DNA of 64,000 bases, from assembly GCF_011386835.1 (NCBI RefSeq), contig NC_088813.1, positions 12,028,001 through 12,092,000 on the forward strand, read 5' to 3'. This stretch comes from Chrysemys picta bellii (Eukaryota). Position numbers and translations under genes: made by a program. Of this stretch, positions 16,166 to 62,901 are shown piece by piece; positions within the stretch are counted from its first letter, which is position 1, and every line of letters begins with the position of its first letter. The notes under the pieces are model-generated. The model was not told the DNA's origin. It ran no database searches and worked only from the letters and a program-made list of their open reading frames with translations.

Positions 16166-16420
<255 letters not shown>

Positions 16421-29043: not shown

Positions 29044-29723
29044 GTACCCAGCTCCTACAGATTGAGAGCACCTCTGAAAATAATGCACAGAGCCCATCCG
29101 CCAGGCCGGGAGAGGAGAAACGGTGCCGGGACTTAGCCGCCAGGAAGGAATAAAGTGTCATTCAACGGGCCCATTGTAGGGAAAGTGCTTCAAAAATAGT
29201 TATGCAGAGCAGATTGCCAAGGTACATAGAGTCCAGCAAGGGGCACTGACTTCCCCAAGCCTAATGGGCCATTACTGTCTCAGTGAATTCTCTGAACAGC
29301 CTGGAAGCCTAGGAGGACATCAGAGGAGAACGCTGGGCAAATTGGAAGCAGTTGAAACGGAAAACTCTTATCAAGTCAATGAGTCTGTGCTGACTCTGTG
29401 ATTCCAGCCCAGCAACATATAAATAGTCCCTGGCCCAGTGTCACAAGGAGGGACACAAAAGAACAGATCCTCGGCTGGTGTTAGTCAGCCTAGTTCCACT
29501 GACTTCAATGGGGCAGATCCCCAGCTGGTGTGAATCAGCAAAGATCTATTTACATACACCGAGGACCTGGCCGAAAGAATTTTAATGTGTGTCTCTCTGT
29601 TAATAGCCTCCACTGTTGTTAGTAATAATGCTGTGCTTTGAAGTCTGTTTTATGCAAGCTAACAGATCCATCATGCATGCCAGCGGCAGACAGACAGCTA
29701 GAGAGAGCAGGACTCGGTCTAAC

Positions 29724-29785
29724 CTTTTTCCCAGTTCATTGCGTCCCATCATACCAGGTGGAAGGATCCTCTTCTCCTTTGGCAC
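29724..29785 (-). CDS. GRHL3: GRHL3 exon 3 (62 nt)
   Basis: tttgcag|GTG CCA AAG GAG AAG AGG ATC ... AAA AG|gttaga; VPKEKRILPPGMMGRNELGK(R). Confidence 0.93.
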
Positions 29786-30157
29786 CTGCAAAAGGGCAAA
29801 GCAACGACTCCCTCACTGCCACAGATTAACACATAGAACCCAGAGGCAAAATAAACCCCATCTATAATAAGTGTAGTCTAGTGGCTAAGGCCCTACACTG
29901 GGACTCAGGTGTGTCAGGTTCGCTTCCCTCCTATCCCAAATTCTGTGTGAATTATGCCTCATTTTCCCTTCTCTACACTAAAGCAGTGCCCCACCTCCCA
30001 AGGGAGTTGTGTGGATCCAGATGTTCACAGTTGTGAGGTTCTCAGATACTCTGATAATGGGGAGCCATATGAAGTACTTAAGGGCTTTGTCTACACTAGC
30101 ACTTATAAAAAGAACAGGAGTACTTGTGGCACCTTAGAGACTAACAAATTTATTAGA

Positions 30158-30197
30158 GCATAAGCTTTCGTGGGCTACTGCCCACTTCTTCGGATGC
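30158..30197 (-). ncRNA. Minimal type-I hammerhead ribozyme motif, minus-strand copy (sense in GRHL3 pre-mRNA)
   Basis: Exact reverse complement of 30395-30434. Confidence 0.65.
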
Positions 30198-30394
30198 ATA
30201 TAGAGTGGAACATATATTGAGGAGATATATATACACACATACAGAGAGCATGAACAAACAAACAAAAACAAACAAAAATAGTTTTTTTTTCTCTTACTTA
30301 ATTGGCCTCTCAGAGTTGGTAAGACAACTCCCACCTGTTCATGCTCTCTGTATGTGTGTATATATATCTCCTCAATATATGTTCCACTCTATAT

Positions 30395-30434
30395 GCATCC
30401 GAAGAAGTGGGCAGTAGCCCACGAAAGCTTATGC
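30395..30434 (+). ncRNA. Minimal type-I hammerhead ribozyme motif, plus-strand copy
   Basis: GCAT-CCGAAGA-A-GTGGGC-AGTA-GCCCAC-GAA-AGCT-T-ATGC: stem I GCAT/ATGC, core C-C-G-A-N-G-A (U4C variant), 6-bp stem II, GAAA, palindromic stem III. Activity unknown. Confidence 0.65.
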
Positions 30435-30770
30435 TCTAATAAATTTGTTAGTCTCTAAGGTGCCACAAGTACTCCTGTTCTTTTTGCGGATACAGACTAA
30501 CACGGGTGCTACTCTGAAACTAGCACTTATGTCGTTAAAACTTTTGTCGCTCAGGGGTGTGAAAAAACAAACCGTCGCCAGGAGCCGCACTCCTAGCGAT
30601 GAAGCTACCGCCCCTCGTTGGAGGTGGTTTTATTTTGCTGCCGGGATCAAGAGCGGCTAGACAGCGCGCCGTACAATGCGCCGTTGTAAGGTGCACTGTG
30701 TAGACACAGCTTAAGAGAAATCACTGAGCACACATGCAGCCTTCCCCAGGCTGCAGAGTGACAGGCTAAC

Positions 30771-31177
30771 CATAGGCGCTGGCTCCGTGACTGCTCCAGG
30801 CCTGGAGGGAGCACCCACGGAAAAAAAAAATACGCAGCACCCACCAGCCACAGCTGTTTGGCAGTGCTGCCAATCAGCTATTTGGCAGCACCCCTGATTA
30901 GCTAATCGGGGGCAACAGCAAACAGCTGATTGGGGGCTCGGGGAGGAGTTTGGGGGATGGTGGAGAGCAGCGAGCGGCAGGCGGAGGCCTTGGGGAGGGG
31001 GCAGAACTGGGGCAGGAAGAGGTGAAGCAAAGGGTGGGGCCTAGGGGAAAGGGTGGAGCGCAGGGCAGGGCCTAGGGGAAAGGGTGGAGCGCAGGGCAGG
31101 GCATGGGAGGGGCCTTGGGGGAAGAGACGGAGTGGGGGTGGAGCACCCCCAGGGAAAACGAAATGGTGGCGCCTATG
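30771..31177. mobile_element. hAT-type MITE (CATAGGCGC termini)
   Basis: TIRs cataggcgc / gcgcctatg; perfect 8-bp TSD AGGCTAAC (30763-30770, 31178-31185); internal tandem duplication of about 30 bp at 31037-31100. Confidence 0.92.
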
Positions 31178-31216
31178 AGGCTAACTGAGGGCACACGGTG
31201 CCCACTAGGAACGTAC

Positions 31217-31403
31217 CATGTAGTAGTCATAGAGGAGGCTCAGGGCAGCCACACTGTCGTCATCTCCGTTCACCCTCATCATGGCCTTGGTGGCAGCTGT
31301 CAGGGGGTTCTCCAGGTAGCTTTTCCAGGCTTCGTCTTCATTGGTGTAGGAGAATTTCGGGAAGTTCATGCTGTCGTTCTTCAGGAAGCACACGGACCTG
31401 AAA
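31217..31403 (-). CDS. GRHL3: GRHL3 exon 2 (187 nt, N-terminal activation region)
   Basis: ctcag|T TTC AGG TCC ... TAC ATG|gtacgt; encodes [62 protein letters not shown], a Grainyhead-like signature. Confidence 0.97.
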
Positions 31404-37427: not shown

Positions 37428-37540
37428 GTTACAAAGTAGCAGCCGTGTTAGTCTGTATCCGCAAAAAGAACAGGAGTACTTGTGGCACCTTAGAGACTAA
37501 CACATTTATTTCAGCATAAGCTTTCGTGGGCTACAGCTCA
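37428..37540 (-). mobile_element. Truncated Penelope-like terminal repeat (partial hammerhead)
   Basis: gttacaaagtagcagccgtgttagtctgtatccgcaaaaagaacaggagtacttgtggcacc... is near-identical to the reverse complement of 30410-30520. Confidence 0.85.
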
Positions 37541-56047: not shown

Positions 56048-57671
56048 TAGGGCTATCAAGTGATTAGAAAAATTCATCGCGATTAATCGCGCTGATAAAC
56101 AATAATAGAATATCCTTTATTTAAATATTTATTTAGTTTTCTACATTTTCAAATATATTGATTTAAATTGCAACACAGAATATGAAGTGTACAGCACTCA
56201 CTTTATATGTATGTTTTATTACAAATATTTGCACTGTAAGGAACAAAACAAATAGTATTTTTCAATTCATCTCATACAAGTACTGTAGTGCGATCTCTAT
56301 CGTGAAAGTTGAACTTTACAAATGTAGCATTATGTACAAAAAGAGAACTGCATTCAAAAATAAAACTATGTAAAACTTTAGAGCCTACAAGTCCACTCAG
56401 TCCAACTTCTTGTTCAGCCAATTGCTCAGACTAACAAGGTTGGTTACAATTTGCAGGAGATAATGCTGCCTGCTTCTTGTTTACAATGTCACCCGAAAGT
56501 GAGAACAGGCGTTCGCATGGCACTGTTGCAGCCGGCGTCGCAAGATATTTATTTGCCAGATGCACTAAAGATTCATATGTCCCTTCATGCTTCAACCACC
56601 ATTCCAGAGGACACACGTCCATGCTGATGACGGGTTCTGCTCAATAACAATCCAAAGCAGTGCATACTGACGCATGTTCATTTTCATCATCTGAGTCAGA
56701 TGCCACCAGCAGAAGGTTGATTTTCTTTTTTGGTGGTTCGGGTTCTGTAGTTTCTGCATCTGAGTGTTGTTCTTTTAAGACTTCTGAAAGCATGCGCCAC
56801 AGGTCGCCCCTCTCAGATTTTGGAAGGCACTTCAGATTCTTAAACCTTGGGTTGAGTGCTGTAGCTATTTTTAGAAATCTCACATTGGTACCTTCTTTGC
56901 ATTTTGTCAAATCTGCTGTGAAAGTGTTGTTAAAACGAACATGTGCTGGGTCATCATCTGAGACTGCTATCACATGAAATATACGGCAGAATGCGGGTAA
57001 AACAGAGCAGGAGACATACAATTCTCCCCCAAGGAGTTCAGTCACAAATTTAATTAACACATTATTTTTTTAAACGAGCATCATCAGCATGGAAGCATGT
57101 TCTCCTGAATGGTGGCCGAAGCATGAAGGGGCATACGAACGTTTAGCATATCTGGCATGTAAATACCTTGCAATGCTGGCTACAAAAGTGCCATGTGAAA
57201 GCCTGTTCTCACTTTTGGGTGACATTGGAAATAAGAAGCAGGCAGCATTATCTCCTGTAAATGTAAACTTTTTTGTCTTAGCGATTGGCTGAACAAGAAG
57301 TTGGATTGAGTGGACTTGTAGGCTCTAAAGTTTTACATTGTTTTGTTTTTGAGTGCAGTCATGTAACAAAATAATCTGCATTTGTAAATTACACTTTCAC
57401 GACAAAGATTGCACTACAATACATGTCTGAGGTGAATTGAAACATACTATTTCTTTTGTTTATCATTTTTATAGTGCAAATATTTATAATCAAAAATATA
57501 ATATAAAGTGAACACGGTACACTTTGTGTTGTAATAGAAATCAATATATTTGAAAATGTAGAAAAACATCCAAAATATTTAATACATTTCAATTGGTATT
57601 CTCTTGTTTAACAGTGCGATGGTTTTTTTTAGTTAATTGCGTGAGTTAACTACGATTAATCGATAGCCCTA
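56048..57671. mobile_element. Non-autonomous hAT transposon with long (about 585-bp) inverted arms and transposase remnants
   Basis: TIR tagggctatc / gatagcccta; TSD aaaaatag / ataaaaag (6/8); hAT motifs LNPRFK and the C-terminal dimerisation domain (LEWW...KYLATPAATVPCERLFSLSG). Confidence 0.92.
56431..57060 (-). pseudogene. hAT transposase C-terminal remnant (frameshifted or stopped)
   Basis: ORFs 56641..57060 and 56431..56622; an inverted second copy of the dimerisation domain lies at 57089..57292 (+). Confidence 0.88.
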
Positions 57672-60665
57672 ATAAAAAGGAACCCAGTTTCACACAACCC
57701 TGAAGAAGATATAAACCTTGACAGCAAGATGATATTTTCCTCTGAGCTCCCATACGAGCTCAAGACTTACATCCATTATTTATACAGTGTCCTAGAGAGC
57801 CTGCTACCATACAGGCAGGAAGAGAAAGTCCTCTACCCTGAAGTTATTTCAGCATGAAATAGATAGATACAGCATCTGAGATCAGATCAGGCACAAGAGG
57901 GGTAGAAGCTGGGTAAAAAATGGAGCTTTTGGTTCACTGGCAATTTCAAAAATTTGAAAAAAAAATTCTTGGACCAAAATAATTTTTTTTCTTTTTTTAC
58001 TTTTCAACAAATCCAAAAGAAAAAATATAGTTTCCAGTCAAACAAATGGTTTAGTTTTAAACAAATCAAAATGTTTCATTTCAACATTTAAAAAAACATT
58101 GAAAAGTGCTCAATTTTTAAAATAAAATAAAATTAAAAGACATTTTGAAACAAAAAGCTGTTTCGGGCAAAAATAATGAAAGGTTTCAAAATTGTCATAA
58201 CTGGTCATTTTGATTTTTTCAGCGTTTTTTTTTAAGTTTTTTTTTTTCTAAACAAAATAATTCTGCAAAATCAATACATCGTTGGGAAACTTGTTGGTGT
58301 TGCCGAATCGGTATTTTTAATCACACAAAAAAAAGTGTAGGGTGAAAAGTTTTGCCCAGCTCTAAGCCCTGGGAGTAGCACCCCCAGGGATCAGTGGAGA
58401 GGGAAGGCTGCGGGTTGAGACAAAAGATGCCAGATGCTGATAGAAAAGCTAGTCACGGTGAGTTTCATTTATTTTGCACAGCGTTGATCTGAATAAAAGA
58501 CAGAGGCTAATGGAACACCAGGCTCTCACCTCTCCTATCTCACTGTCTATCTCAAGTTCTTTCACTGGCTCAGCTAAAGGGCAGGTTATACAGAGGGGGT
58601 TTCTTGCCTTAGGGACTGCACTGCCATTTCACTCTGACTGATGCAGATGGGATTAACTGTGAGCAGACACTCCCCGGCCCCTAGATAATCCCACGGGGGG
58701 TCACATCAGGCCCAGGATGGCAACCGCAACCACTGGGAGAAGGTAATACAGGTTGGGGCCAATTCTGACCCCTTTCCTGTATGCACAGAGGGTGGGTCCT
58801 ACCTGCCACCCATTTGGGTCCCACTGTGTGGGAAACAATTTGGGGAACCCCCGTAGTGGGTAGATTCAGGCCAGAGCTGGCAGCTGTCTCTCTACATAAA
58901 CCCATTGGCCTGACTGCACAATGATGGAGGAGTACAGAAGCCAAAGAGGTTGCCTCTGGATGGGAGACTGAAGTGAGCTGCAGAATAGTTCTATGGCCTT
59001 CCTCTGTGGCCTTGGGGCTCGGGTAATCCCATCTCCTCACCCACCAAGAAGCTCCCCCGTGCAGTGCCCAGCCACTCAGACTGGGCATTCTGCAGGAGTT
59101 GGCATGCAGGCACTGGAATGCTTCCCATGCTGGCCCAAGCATGAAATCCCACCGGCAGCTCTACCGTGCCCATCACCGTAGTGTCAGCTCCTTTTCCTTT
59201 TCCTGATCTCACCTAGGATGCTCCGCTCCAGGACACCCAATACAGCACCCGTGGCTAATAAAGCCAACCCTCGGCATTTACTCCCTGAGGTCAAGCTATA
59301 AAATTAGCAACCCAAAACACTCCACACCGGCGGATGTACTAATTAGTGCAAACTGGGATGGCTCCAGTGCAGTTCTGAGCACGATGCTTTTAATAACAGC
59401 ACAGATGCTGAGACGCTCATAATTCAGTTGATGACTCTCTATGAGGCTGAGGAGCCCAGATGTGTAATAAGCAAGACTGGCCCCATGACTGTAGTTTCAC
59501 CTCCTGGGCTTGGCTTATTGTCTGATCTCTTTCCCCAGTGGGAAGGTTTCTGGGGTTTCTAGTCCCTCTGGCTAGGTGGCAGGAGGACAGTATTTCTCAA
59601 CTACAACCAGGAATCAGGGAAGCCCCATATTCCAGAGCTTTCTCTTCCTTACTCAGGACCCGTTGGCAACCAGTCAAACTTGGGTTGGTGTCCGTTAAAG
59701 CATAAGAAGAGAGTGAGTAATATTTCCTTCCCAACCTTCAGGCTGAGGTGAACCCAGAAGCAGGGGAGGTCACAAACAGCAGGGAAGCTTCTAATCTGTT
59801 TAGGATTGTAAATGAACATCCAAGGCTTCAGTTCTTCCAGTTGCAGAGACAGGGGTAATGGAGAATCCCCGTGAGCAGTTTAGAGGAGCAGGTGGCTCTC
59901 TATCCCTAGTATCCGAACTCCTCACAATGCCCCGGTGAAGTAGGGAAGTTCTATTTTCCACAACGTTCAGATGGGATCGGAGGCACAGAGAGATGAAGTG
60001 ATATTCCCGAGATCACACGGGGAGTCTGCAACAGAGACAGGAACTGAATCCAGGTGAGCTAAGTTCTGAGCTGGACAGCTAAACACTGGATCATCCTTCC
60101 TCCCTCAAGTAAGGCTCTAACTGGGTGTCCAAAAAGAGTCTGCAGGTTCTTCATTTGGTGGGGTGAAGGGGTCTGTATTCTCTGGCACATCCCTCAACCC
60201 ACCCCAGCCCAAACAGGGAAAAGAACCAAACTGAGGGTCGCACAGAACTATCAGTTCAGGGAGCTGGGAATGATGTGAGACTGGCTGCATTAGCATCAGT
60301 GTTGTGTATAACCCTGGCCTTATCATTTCACACATCTGATGTCAATCATTTACCTCAGTGACAGGGAAAGAACAGCAGTGTGGGCCAGAGGATAAATCTA
60401 GGTCTCCAAGGAGGAACTGTCCTTCAGAAAGACACACATGGCTATCAAGTGTTGGATGCTACGCCGGGGAATCACTACACAGCTACCTTAAAGGTGACTG
60501 GCAAAGGAAAAAGAAGTGGGTTCATGCCCCACTTTCCCACTCTTTGTTCAAACAAGTGAAGGCCTGACAAGTTTGGGAGTTTAACTTAAGAAAACTTCTG
60601 CTTGAATTTGTTAACATACAAATTTCTTATCTTCCCTGTTTTCCTTAGAAAAATCTATGGGTGAC

Positions 60666-62901
60666 TTGTAAAAATGTAATAAGAAAAGCCAAAGAAGAGT
60701 TTGAAGAACAGCTAGCCAAAAACTCAAAAGGTAATAAAATGTTTTTTAAGTACATCAGAAGCAGGAAGCCTGCTAAACAACCAGTGGGGCCTCTCAATGA
60801 TCAAGATACAAAAGGAGCACTTAAAGACGATAAAGTCATTGCGGAGAAACTAATCTAATTCTTTCCTTCAGTCTTCACGGCTGAGGTTGTTAGGGAGATT
60901 CCCAAACCTGACCCGGCTTTTGTAGGTGACAAATCTGAGGAACTGTCACGGATTGAAGTGTCACTAGAGGAGGTTTTGGAATTAATTGATAAACTTAACA
61001 TTAACAAGTCACCGGGACCAGATGGCATTCACCCAAGAGTTCTGAAAGAACTCAAAGGTGATGTTGCAGAACTATTAACTAGGGTTTATAACCTGTCCTT
61101 TAAATCGGCTTCTGTACCCAACGATAGCTAATGTAACACCAATATTTAAAAAGGGCTCTAGAGGTGATCCCGGCAATTACAGACCGGTAAGTCTAGCGTC
61201 GGTACCGGGCAAATTAGTCGAAACAATAGTAAAGAATAAAATTTTCAGACACATAGAAGAACATAAATTGTTGGGCAGAAGTCAACATGGTTTCTGTAAA
61301 GGGAAATCGTGTCTTACTAATCTATTAGAGTTCTTTGAAGGGGTCAATAAACATGTGGACAAGGGGGATCCAGTGGACATAGTGTACTTAGATTTCCAGA
61401 AAGCCTTTGACAAGGTCCCTCACCAAAGGCTCTTACGTAAATTAAGTTGTCATGGGATAAAAGGGAAGCTCCTTTCATGGATTGAGAACTGGTTAAAAGA
61501 CAGGGAACAAAGGCCTGGTCCACACTAACCCCCCACTTCAAACTAAGATACGCAACTTAGTTCGAACTTACCGCGGGTCCAGACGCGGCAGGCAGGCTCC
61601 CCCGTCGACGCCGCATACTCCTCTCGAGGAGCAGGAGTACCAGCATCGAGGGCGAGCACTTCCGGGATCGATTTATCGCGTCTAGACAAGATGCAATAAA
61701 TCGAACCCAGAAGATCGATTGCTTACCGCCGGACCCGGAGGTAAGTATAGACGTACCCAAAGAGTAGGAATTAATGGTAAATTCTCAGAATGGAGAGGGG
61801 TAACTAGTGGTGTTCCCCAAGGGTCAGTCCTAGGACCAATCCTATTCAACTTATTCATAAATGATCTGGAGAAAGGGGTAAAAAGTGAGGTGGCAAAGTT
61901 TGCAGATGATACTAAACTGCTCAAGATAGTTAAGACCAAAGCAGACTGTGAAGAACTTCAAAAAGATCTCACAAAACTAAGTGATTGGGCAACAAAATGG
62001 CAAATGAAATTTAATGTGGATAAATGTAAAGTAATGCACATTGGAAAAAATAACCCCAACTATACATACAATATGAAGGGGGCTAATTTAGCTACAACTA
62101 ATCAGGAAAAAGATCTTGGAGTCATCGTGGATAGTTCTCTGAAGATGTCCACGCAGTGTGCAGAGGCGGTCAAAAAAGCAAACAGGATGTTAGGAATCAT
62201 TAAAAGGGGATAGAGAATAAGAAGGAGAATATATTATTGCCCTTATATAATTCGATGGTACACCCACATCTTGAATACTGCGTACAGATGTGATCTCATC
62301 TCAAAAAAGATATACTGGCACTAGAAAAGGTTCAGAGAAGGGCAACTAAAATGATTAGGGGTTTGGAACGGGTCCCATATGAGGAGAGATTAAAGAGGCT
62401 AGGACTTTTCAGCTTGGAAAAGAGGAGACTAAGGGGGGATATGATAGAGGTATATAAAATCATGAGTGGTGTGGAGAAAGTGAATAAGGAAAAGTTATTT
62501 ACTTGTTCCCATCATATAAGAACTAGGGGCCACCAAATGAAATTAATGGGCAGCAGGTTTAAAACAAATAAAAGGAAGTTCTTCTTCACACAGCGCACAG
62601 TCAACTTGTGGAACTCCTTACCTGAGGAGGTTGTGAAGGCTAGGACTATAATAGTGTTTAAAAGAGAACTGGATAAATTCATGGAGGTTAAGTCCATTAA
62701 TGGCTATTAGGCAGGATGGGTAAGGAATGGTGTCCCTAGACTCTGTTTGTCAGAGGGTGGAGATGGATGGCAGGAGAGAGATCACTTGATCATTACCTGT
62801 TAGGTTCACTCCCTCTGGGACACCTGACATTGGCCACTGTCGGTAGACAGGATACTGGGTTAGATGGACCTTTGGTCTGACCCAGTACGGTCGTTCTTAT
62901 G
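60666..62901 (+). mobile_element. 5'-truncated CR1 LINE, ORF2 reverse transcriptase region (inactivated)
   Basis: QHGFCKGKSCLTNLLEFFE, DIVYLDFQKAFDKVPH, GVPQGSVLGPILFNLFINDL, FADDTKL; stops and frameshifts; tail gttcttatg. Confidence 0.97.
61512..61758. mobile_element. PIF/Harbinger-type MITE inserted in the CR1 reverse transcriptase region
   Basis: TIRs ggcctggtccacact / agtatagacgtaccc; 3-bp TSD AAA. Removing it restores ...WLKDREQRVGINGKFSEW. Confidence 0.9.

What the first reader, a model, noticed from the sequence alone, without database searches (positions are those of the whole stretch)
30107..30520. Foldback Penelope-like insertion carrying twin hammerhead ribozymes in GRHL3 intron 2
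Seen: a 414-bp insertion with a 10-bp TSD whose two inverted arms each contain GCAT-CCGAAGA-A-GTGGGC-AGTA-GCCCAC-GAAAGCTT-ATGC, one copy per strand. Established: Penelope-like retroelement pseudo-LTRs carry minimal type-I hammerheads with a palindromic helix III that work as dimers, and insertions often have an inverted partial repeat. Inference: GRHL3 pre-mRNA contains a potentially self-cleaving motif about 370 nt upstream of exon 3. The U4C change and extra A after A9 may reduce or abolish activity.
Basis: partly seen in the sequence, partly recalled or inferred. Interest (0 to 1): 0.8.

Follow-up and report, generated by a model that had tools for sequence, protein, structure and literature searches.

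The report
Penelope retroelement fold-back scar in intron
This is an ordinary, dead fragment of a very abundant turtle Penelope-like retrotransposon, inserted as a hairpin in an intron of a Grainyhead-like gene. Its hammerhead-like motif is real as a sequence pattern, but in this arrangement it is very unlikely to cut the gene's RNA.

Summary
Window 30107-30518/30520 is an insertion flanked by a perfect 10-12 bp duplication. It has two 150-nt, 100% complementary arms, and each arm carries the quoted motif: + strand 30395-34, - strand 30197-58.

The layout is the published Penelope-like element (PLE) insertion signature. A 5'-truncated copy sits next to an inverted, shorter copy, and a 33-35 nt "tail" is present at one end only. 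K-mer depth suggests roughly 10^5 family copies in four related species, and the left junction is present in three of them.

The gene is Grainyhead-like, on the minus strand. The predicted cut lies 376 nt upstream of exon 3.

The ribozyme inference is weak:
- No Rfam hammerhead match, even at E<=10.
- Core position 4 is C, apparently across the subfamily.
- Either strand's transcript holds only one sense motif, preceded by its perfect complement. There is no cis dimer, and all 40 nt are locked in a hairpin of about -323 kcal/mol.
- The extra A is a normal feature of PLE mini-hammerheads.

First readers of this scan flagged the same kind of element many times elsewhere in this genome.

Verdict: a new member of a known kind, of low interest.

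The parts
30095..30106 (.). Left copy of the target-site duplication, ACTAGCACTTAT.
   Evidence: family D2: 12 nt, 100% identical, directly abutting the insertion.
30107..30256 (-). Inverted, 5'-truncated partial copy of the element (left arm). It lacks the tail. Its sense strand is the minus strand, the same as the host gene.
   Evidence: pair I1 (150 nt, 100% complementary). BLAST of the direct copy hits it in reverse at 100%.
30158..30197 (-). Hammerhead-like motif in the sense of the Grainyhead-like pre-mRNA. The predicted cut lies between 30162 and 30161.
   Evidence: In the predicted fold all 40 nt are paired with the upstream antisense arm.
30257..30282 (.). A/C-rich filler of 26 nt, (AAC/AAAC)-like, at the head-to-head junction of the two copies.
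   Evidence: sequence. The BLAST alignment of the direct copy starts at 30283.
30283..30520 (+). Direct, 5'-truncated copy of the element. It comprises 53 nt found only in this copy, the right arm 30336-30485, and the tail.
   Evidence: High family depth from about 30266 onwards (table 2).
30395..30434 (+). Hammerhead-like motif on the plus strand. Helix I is 30395-98 with 30431-34. The core C-C-G-A-A-G-A is 30399-30405, followed by a bulged A at 30406. Helix II is 30407-12 with 30417-22, with loop AGTA. GAA is 30423-25. A15.1-G-C-U16.1 is 30426-29 and U17 is 30430.
30486..30518 (+). The 'tail': a 33-35 nt extension present only at this end of the insertion unit. It is AC-rich, and 12 nt of it pair with 30446-57.
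   Evidence: arms stop at 30485; pair I3. table 7: family copies end either at about 30486 or at 30520. Matches the optional 30-40 bp PLE tail (PMC8557442, PMC11167929).
30519..30530 (.). Right copy of the target-site duplication.
   Evidence: family D2.
29724..29785 (-). Exon 3 of the Grainyhead-like gene (62 nt). It encodes VPKEKRILPPGMMGRNELGK and is flanked by AG and GT.
31217..31397 (-). Exon 2 of the Grainyhead-like gene. Intron 2 is 31216..29786 (1431 nt).
37432..37540 (-). Second copy of the same family. It is a single arm, 5'-truncated inside helix II, with the same 3' end including the tail.
   Evidence: 93.6% over 109 nt.

Best explanation
This is a fixed, non-coding scar of a Penelope-like retroelement (PLE).

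How it arose. Only the last ~236 nt of the element's RNA were copied into the target. This is the pseudo-LTR end, which carries the mini-hammerhead motif. During the same event a second, shorter cDNA (150 nt) was made from the opposite DNA strand, starting at the inner of the element's two reverse-transcription start sites. The two copies therefore sit head to head, and only one carries the 33-35 nt tail. The endonuclease's staggered cuts left a 10-12 bp target duplication.

The family. It is extremely abundant (order 10^5 copies) in several related turtles. This insertion predates the split from a species whose flanks differ by about 2%.

Consequence in the host pre-mRNA (minus strand). The antisense arm is transcribed first and the single sense motif second. 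The RNA zips into a 150-bp perfect hairpin and the hammerhead fold is not available. Together with the non-canonical C at core position 4 and the known feeble activity of PLE mini-hammerheads, this makes self-cleavage of the pre-mRNA very unlikely. The insertion is most likely neutral. If it has any RNA-level effect, it is that of a long intronic double-stranded hairpin.

Shown here: the anatomy, family abundance, shared junction, gene context and predicted folds.
Inferred: the two-start-site origin of the arms, the absence of cleavage, and neutrality.
For: Anatomy: 150-nt perfect arms, 12-nt direct repeat, one-sided 33-nt tail.

Family behaviour:
- A second, single-arm, 5'-truncated copy shares the 3' end.
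- Family copies end at about 30486 or at 30520 (table 7).
- More than 1,200 different arm-to-arm joints are seen in each of four species, so fold-backs with variable turn-round points are a family-wide outcome (table 5).
- Summed depth is 1-5 million over the element against 6-22 on unique flanks (table 2).
- Unique-depth contigs of runs X2, X10 and X13 run from the flank 24 nt into the element (table 8).

Literature:
- An inverted 5'-truncated copy and a 30-40 bp tail at one end are typical of PLEs (PMC8557442).
- The tail corresponds to the sequence between two RT start sites, and the protein cleaves and extends both strands (PMC11167929).
- Mini-hammerheads in PLE pseudo-LTRs have a bulged nucleotide 5' of helix II and low activity even as dimers. 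Pairs on opposite strands 100-700 bp apart have been described, and turtles are mentioned (PMC4209133).
- The distal end here lies 90 nt after the predicted cut. By my arithmetic from the published positions, the Anolis Poseidon element gives 85-92 nt (PMC11167929).

Folding:
- The monomer folds at -14.3 kcal/mol with no helix III.
- The double hammerhead scores -27.1, no better than two monomers.
- The pre-mRNA hairpin scores -323.4 kcal/mol, z = -34.6, with every motif base paired to the other arm.
Against: - No full-length family copy with reverse transcriptase and GIY-YIG endonuclease could be retrieved, so the link to an autonomous PLE rests on architecture and literature.
- Thermodynamic prediction ignores folding kinetics, helicases and RNA-binding proteins. 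The helix II hairpin could form transiently before the long stem zips.
- A U4C hammerhead still supports viroid infectivity (PMC3088659), so C4 alone does not prove inactivity.
- All other core positions are intact, and the common family variants inside the motif fall in loop II (30413) or make a G-U pair in helix II (30174, mirror of 30418). This is what a constrained structure would show (table 3).
- The arms show 0 differences where at least about 3 are expected since the split from species E (P about 0.04), which hints at something other than plain neutral decay.
Confidence: 0.85

Rival explanations
1. The motif is an active self-cleaving hammerhead that cuts the Grainyhead-like pre-mRNA 376 nt upstream of exon 3, alone or by pairing with another copy.
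For: - Ten of eleven conserved core positions are present, together with helix I, helix II and a palindromic AGCU helix III.
- Common family variation spares the core.
- U4C viroid hammerheads work in vivo (PMC3088659).
Against: - No Rfam hammerhead match at E<=10, even for the isolated motif.
- There is only one sense motif per transcript, so a dimer would need a second RNA molecule. The predicted double hammerhead (-27.1 kcal/mol) is no more stable than two monomers.
- The sense motif is completely paired with the upstream arm in the predicted fold.
- PLE mini-hammerheads cleave poorly even as dimers (PMC4209133).
- No RNA-seq ends were found at the hammerhead site of an Anolis PLE (PMC11167929).
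Confidence: 0.06
2. The perfect 150-bp hairpin is itself the functional or maintained unit. It would be an intronic double-stranded RNA (a substrate for editing or dicing, or a modulator of splicing), with the arms kept identical by arm-to-arm gene conversion or by selection.
For: - The arms are 100% identical and all four CpGs are intact, although the insertion is shared with a species whose left flank differs by 2.1% (tables 3 and 8). At least about 3.2 arm differences are expected, so P(0) is about 0.04.
- The hairpin is extremely stable.
Against: - This is one locus with a marginal P value.
- Polishing of an assembly can homogenise inverted repeats.
- The state of the arms in the other species could not be read.
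- No run on record as RNA holds the locus.
- Fold-backs arise automatically from the PLE insertion mechanism, so no function is needed to explain the structure.
Confidence: 0.08
3. It is a fold-back DNA transposon or MITE with long terminal inverted repeats, not a retroelement.
For: Long perfect inverted arms and a target-site duplication.
Against: - The ends are asymmetric, with a tail on one side only.
- A single-arm, 5'-truncated copy has the same 3' end.
- There are hundreds of different turn-round points but fixed outer ends across the family (tables 5 and 7).
Confidence: 0.02

Closest known systems
Minimal hammerhead motifs (min-HHRs) in pseudo-LTRs of metazoan Penelope-like elements (Cervera & de la Pena 2014, PMC4209133)
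   Same: - Type-I layout with a short helix I (4 bp) and a long helix II (6 bp).
[quoted passage not shown]
- No helix III hairpin, but a palindromic sequence that could pair in a dimer.
- Mostly dispersed single motifs from truncated elements.
- Pairs on opposite strands 100-700 bp apart.
- Reported in turtles.
   Different: Core position 4 is C (CCGAAGA) instead of the U required by the published descriptor. No cleavage data exist for this subfamily.
Poseidon PLE of Anolis carolinensis, PAc (Frangieh et al. 2024, PMC11167929)
   Same: - An optional 30-40 bp tail at the outer end, explained by two RT start sites.
- Both target strands are cleaved and extended, which accounts for inverted copies.
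- The AC-rich 3' region lies about 85-92 nt after the hammerhead cut site (my arithmetic from the published positions); here it is 90 nt.
- The hammerhead is dispensable for insertion in vitro.
   Different: PAc is a full element with an open reading frame that starts at helix II. Here only ~236 nt are present, and the reading frame from the upstream ATG stops after 21 codons.
General PLE insertion architecture (Craig, Yushenova, Rodriguez & Arkhipova 2021, PMC8557442)
   Same: Heavy 5' truncation, an inverted 5'-truncated copy abutting the 5' end, a tail at one end only, and no poly(A).
   Different: No tandem pseudo-LTR and no coding region are present at this locus.
Non-LTR retrozymes of animals (PMC7229834; bioRxiv 10.64898/2026.07.22.740005)
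   Same: Non-autonomous, hammerhead-bearing sequences related to PLE pseudo-LTRs.
   Different: Retrozymes are tandem direct repeats that give circular RNAs after double cleavage. This is a single head-to-head fold-back with one sense motif per transcript.
Natural U4C core variant of a viroid hammerhead (cited in Perreault et al. 2011, PMC3088659)
   Same: The same substitution at core position 4.
   Different: The viroid ribozyme has stabilising tertiary contacts and a proper helix III. Its activity is lowered in vitro but suffices in vivo. Nothing comparable has been tested here.

Membership tests
Penelope-like element (PLE) insertion | An inverted 5'-truncated copy abutting the 5' end of the main copy. 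| tested here: met
   150-nt arms, 100% complementary, joined head to head through a 26-nt filler. One search, table 5 shows many such joints across the family.
Penelope-like element (PLE) insertion | [quoted passage not shown] | tested here: met
   30486-30518/20 is present only on the right. Family copies end at about 30486 or at 30520 (table 7). Definition taken from PMC8557442 and PMC11167929.
Penelope-like element (PLE) insertion | A 5'-truncation series with a common 3' end, no poly(A), and a target-site duplication. | tested here: met
   Copy at 37432-37540; 12-bp duplication; the sequence ends ...CTCTGAAAC without an A run.
Penelope-like element (PLE) insertion | A hammerhead motif within the pseudo-LTR. 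| tested here: met
   The motif is present in both arms, with a non-canonical C at position 4.
Penelope-like element (PLE) insertion | A parent element encoding a telomerase-like reverse transcriptase plus a GIY-YIG endonuclease. | not testable with these tools
   No full-length copy lies in the window. Metagenome and viral collections gave no matches, and the five GTDB 18-mer hits are bacterial MAGs I take as chance matches. The only RT in the window (60.6-62.7 kb) looks CR1-like to me; Pfam gives only RVT_1.
Hammerhead ribozyme (type I, PLE min-HHR) | The conserved core C3-U4-G5-A6-N7-G8-A9, G12-A13-A14, A15.1/U16.1 and H17. | tested here: not met
   Ten of eleven positions fit. Position 4 is C in both arms (30400 and 30192). 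No alternative letter reaching 10% was listed there among family copies, although 13 rows were hidden.
Hammerhead ribozyme (type I, PLE min-HHR) | Helices I and II flanking the core. | tested here: met
   The minimum-free-energy fold of the isolated 40-mer forms GCAU/AUGC and GUGGGC/GCCCAC at -14.3 kcal/mol.
Hammerhead ribozyme (type I, PLE min-HHR) | Helix III, here only as an intermolecular palindrome (AGCU) in a dimer. | tested here: inconclusive
   The palindrome is present. The predicted double hammerhead scores -27.1 kcal/mol against -28.6 for two monomers. No second sense copy lies on the same transcript.
Hammerhead ribozyme (type I, PLE min-HHR) | A match to a curated covariance model (the Rfam hammerhead families). 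| tested here: not met
   No hit at gathering score or at E<=10 on 801 nt or 71 nt. In my judgement these models expect a helix III hairpin, so the test is harsh for min-HHRs.
Hammerhead ribozyme (type I, PLE min-HHR) | Site-specific self-cleavage. | not testable with these tools
   Only contigs were available, with no raw RNA reads.

The most novel reading that the evidence does not exclude
The two 150-nt arms have stayed letter-for-letter identical, CpGs included, since before the split from a species whose flanks differ by about 2%. That would mean small retroelement fold-backs are homogenised by arm-to-arm gene conversion, or that this intronic double-stranded hairpin is under selection. 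Separately, the hugely successful CCGAAGA (C4) subfamily would be a natural large-scale case of a hammerhead core variant that either still works or is dispensable for retrotransposition.
Probability: 0.15. Interest if true: 0.45.

Novelty: new member of a known kind. Interest (0 to 1): 0.2.

Why it matters
For the host gene it probably does not matter. The insertion sits mid-intron, away from the splice sites, and is shared by several species.

Its value is as a clean textbook example. One small locus shows every hallmark of the Penelope-like insertion mechanism: head-to-head copies, a one-sided tail, a target duplication and the mini-hammerhead.

It also shows why 'hammerhead motif in a pre-mRNA' should not be read as 'self-cleaving pre-mRNA'. 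The fold-back guarantees that the motif is masked by its own complement.

The C4 core shared by a subfamily of roughly 10^5 copies agrees with the published in vitro finding that hammerhead activity is not needed for PLE insertion.

Tried and rejected
- Rfam at gathering score on the whole window, and at E<=10 on 801 nt and on 71 nt: no hammerhead family. The only hits were weak matches to long-hairpin plant miRNA models, which reflect the fold-back.
- Exact-pattern scans for family copies. Metagenome contigs gave nothing with two patterns. Viral contigs gave nothing. GTDB genomes gave five 18-mer hits in bacterial MAGs, which I take to be chance matches. No family alignment, consensus or covariation test could therefore be made, and none was attempted.
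- RNA evidence. No run on record as RNA holds the locus. Fourteen small runs only guessed to be RNA hold about half of the sampled words, which I think may be just the repeat portion. Reads were laid on four DNA-type contig runs, so RNA ends, strand and editing could not be examined.
- Lunse, Weinberg & Breaker (RNA Biol; PMC5785218) is not held. The supplement of PMC4209133 is not held.
- Assembly artefact as an explanation for the palindrome: rejected for the insertion itself, because unique-depth short-read contigs of three other species cross the left junction. It is not excluded for the perfect identity of the arms.
- Presence in organism D (run X12) could not be decided, because its flank contig stops at 30061.

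Full report
**1. The observation**

The repeat finder gives two arms, 30107-30256 and 30336-30485. They are 150 nt, 100% complementary and 79 nt apart. It also gives a perfect 12-nt direct repeat, ACTAGCACTTAT, at 30095-30106 and 30519-30530.

These fit both the element's end and the target. Loose ends show family copies running through 30520, so both readings are legitimate.

The quoted motif occurs exactly at 30395-30434 on the plus strand and at 30197-30158 on the minus strand. I scanned with a descriptor of my own: C[TC]GANGA, an optional bulged base, a helix II of at least 4 bp, then GAAA. It finds only these two sites in 64 kb, against 0.03 expected in shuffles.

**2. Gene context**

Stop-to-stop translations put a Grainyhead-like gene on the minus strand. 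The evidence is a C-terminal exon at 894-1055 with Pfam GRHL1_C, a CP2-domain exon at 16166-16420, and PDB hits to the GRHL1/GRHL2 DNA-binding domains.

- Exon 2 ends at 31217 and is followed by GTACGT.
- Exon 3 is 29785-29724, preceded by a pyrimidine tract and AG.
- Intron 2 is therefore 31216..29786, 1431 nt.
- The insertion lies 699-1110 nt into the intron.

Calling the paralogue GRHL3 rests on my memory of the human protein's N- and C-terminal sequences, not on a tool result.

**3. What the element is**

BLAST of the plus-strand copy against the window shows three things:
- The direct copy spans 30283-30518.
- The left arm is its reverse complement over 150 nt.
- A third, single-arm copy lies at 37432-37540 (minus strand, 93.6% identical). 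It is truncated inside helix II but has the same 3' end, including the last 33 nt.

The locus therefore reads as follows: target duplication, inverted 5'-truncated copy without the last 33-35 nt, a 26-nt A/C-rich filler, a direct 5'-truncated copy with those 33-35 nt, target duplication.

[quoted passage not shown] Frangieh et al. (PMC11167929) showed for an Anolis Poseidon element that the protein cleaves and extends both target strands. They also showed that reverse transcription starts at two adjacent internal sites, and that the tail is the sequence between them.

The geometry fits too. Here the outer end lies 90 nt after the predicted hammerhead cut. By my arithmetic from the published positions, the Anolis element gives about 85-92 nt, in an AC-rich stem-loop.

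I could not retrieve a full-length, RT-encoding relative. That membership criterion remains untested.

**4. Family-wide evidence from sequencing runs**

The locus is held by DNA-type runs of at least five coded organisms. I laid the contigs of four of them (X2, X10, X12, X13) on 29650-31300.

- *Abundance.* Summed word depth over the element is 1-5 million, against 6-22 on the unique flanks. The tool warns that this is not a copy number. As an order of magnitude it points to about 10^5 copies in each species. This fits the high Penelope content reported for non-avian reptiles (PMC4350176).
- *Outer ends.* Loose ends pile up at 30105-06 on the left, and at 30486 and 30520 on the right. These are the outer ends with and without the tail.
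- *Fold-back joints.* More than 1,200 distinct joints link a position in the left arm to one in the right arm. One example is 30200|30392, an exactly symmetrical turn-round. Fold-backs with variable truncation points are thus a general product of this family. This argues against a DNA transposon with fixed inverted termini.
- *Shared junction.* Unique-depth contigs of X2, X10 and X13 run from 29650 to 30130, 24 nt into the element, with no mismatch in those 24 nt. The insertion is therefore shared. X12's contig stops at 30061 and is uninformative. The X13 left flank differs from the window at 10 of 481 positions (2.1%).
- *Variants inside the motif.* Among family copies at least 88% alike, two common alternative letters fall within the 40-nt motif. 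One is 30413 in loop II, where T replaces A in about 90%. The other is 30174, the mirror of 30418, where C>U makes a G-U pair in helix II in about 45%. A further common variant at 30437/30155 lies just 3' of the motif.
- *Core.* No alternative reaching 10% was listed for the core, including position 4. The caveat is that 13 rows were not shown.

Unchecked first-reader notes from other windows of this genome independently describe [quoted passage not shown]. They also describe other subfamilies with canonical cores.

**5. Is it a hammerhead?**

At motif level it matches the PLE 'min-HHR' of Cervera & de la Pena (PMC4209133). There is no helix III hairpin. Instead a palindrome (A15.1-G-C-U16.1) could form helix III between two copies.

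Ten of the eleven conserved core positions fit. Position 4 is C. Perreault et al. (PMC3088659) note that a natural U4C variant "considerably decreases activity in vitro" yet supports viroid infectivity.

Rfam finds no hammerhead family at gathering score, nor at E<=10 on 801 nt or on the isolated 71 nt. In my judgement these models expect a helix III hairpin, so the negative result is weak evidence.

I therefore call it a hammerhead-like motif of the PLE type, not a demonstrated ribozyme.

**6. How it would behave in RNA**

The copies are joined head to head. A transcript of either strand therefore reads the antisense arm first and one sense motif second (one search shows this for the host-gene strand).

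- The isolated 40-mer folds at -14.3 kcal/mol, with helices I and II only.
- A double hammerhead built from two molecules evaluates at -27.1 kcal/mol. That is no better than two monomers (-28.6) or a competing duplex (-30.4).
- The 501-nt pre-mRNA segment folds at -323.4 kcal/mol (z = -34.6). It forms a continuous 150-bp stem in which all 40 motif nucleotides pair with the upstream arm.
- The stem nucleates at the loop, and the motif lies 59-98 nt into the downstream arm. Zipping should therefore precede transcription of the motif. This last step is inference.

Published data point the same way. PLE mini-hammerheads cleave poorly even as dimers (PMC4209133). Hammerhead-dead mutants of the Anolis element insert normally in vitro, and no RNA-seq ends were found at its cut site (PMC11167929).

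**7. What remains odd**

The arms show no difference in 150 nt, and all four CpGs are intact. Yet the insertion predates a split marked by 2.1% flank divergence. At least about 3.2 differences would be expected, so P(0) is about 0.04.

Possible explanations are arm-to-arm gene conversion, homogenisation during assembly polishing, or chance. One locus cannot decide between them.

No run on record as RNA holds the locus. Expression, editing and RNA ends could not be examined.

**8. Verdict**

This is a well-preserved but ordinary Penelope-like fold-back scar of a known kind. First readers of this scan have already flagged the kind many times elsewhere in this genome.

The suggestion that it makes the pre-mRNA self-cleaving is not supported.

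Noticed in passing
window 30084-30106 and 30519-30710: The Penelope fragment landed inside another repeat of about 215 bp with 13-nt inverted termini (GCTTTGTCTACAC / GTGTAGACACAGC, 92%). Depth there is 10^2-10^3 times that of the unique flanks, so it is itself a moderately abundant element, possibly a MITE.
   Followed up: partly
window 31037-31102: A 31-bp unit (GGGCCTAGGGGAAAGGGTGGAGCGCAGGGCA) is present in 2.1 perfect copies. Contigs of runs X10 and X12 join 31036 directly to 31068. Those organisms therefore carry one unit fewer, a copy-number difference between species inside intron 2.
   Followed up: partly
window 29650-31300 (run X10, organism C): Divergence is mosaic. The left flank differs at 1 of 481 positions, but the right flank at 16 of 662. 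Organism C thus shares the window's haplotype on one side of the insertion only. Recombination, incomplete lineage sorting or introgression could explain it.
   Followed up: no
window 30149-30154 (minus strand) and 30438-30443 (plus strand): An AAUAAA hexamer followed by a U/GU-rich stretch lies 3 nt after helix I of the motif. In the left arm it is in the sense of the host gene. It is a potential intronic polyadenylation signal, but it too is buried in the hairpin.
   Followed up: no
window 30391-30396 and 30431: Among the best-supported family fold-back joints, 7 of 15 have their right side at 30391-30396, the 5' edge of the motif. One joint, seen in two runs, starts at 30431, the first base after the predicted cut. 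More than 1,200 joints were hidden, so enrichment could not be judged.
   Followed up: no
window 30393-30458: An ATG just upstream of the motif opens a 21-codon frame through the hammerhead-like region that stops at TAA. In the Anolis Poseidon element the real ORF starts at helix II. This family's end therefore looks like a non-coding derivative of that region.
   Followed up: no
window 60649-62707 (+): Reverse-transcriptase fragments (Pfam RVT_1, E about 1e-16) that look CR1-like to me, broken by frame changes. They are unrelated to the Penelope fragment.
   Followed up: partly
window 56434-56640 (-) and 57074-57289 (+): Two diverged fragments encoding the hAT C-terminal dimerisation region lie in inverted orientation. 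The first gave a Pfam Dimer_Tnp_hAT hit (E = 9e-12); the second was judged by eye only.
   Followed up: partly
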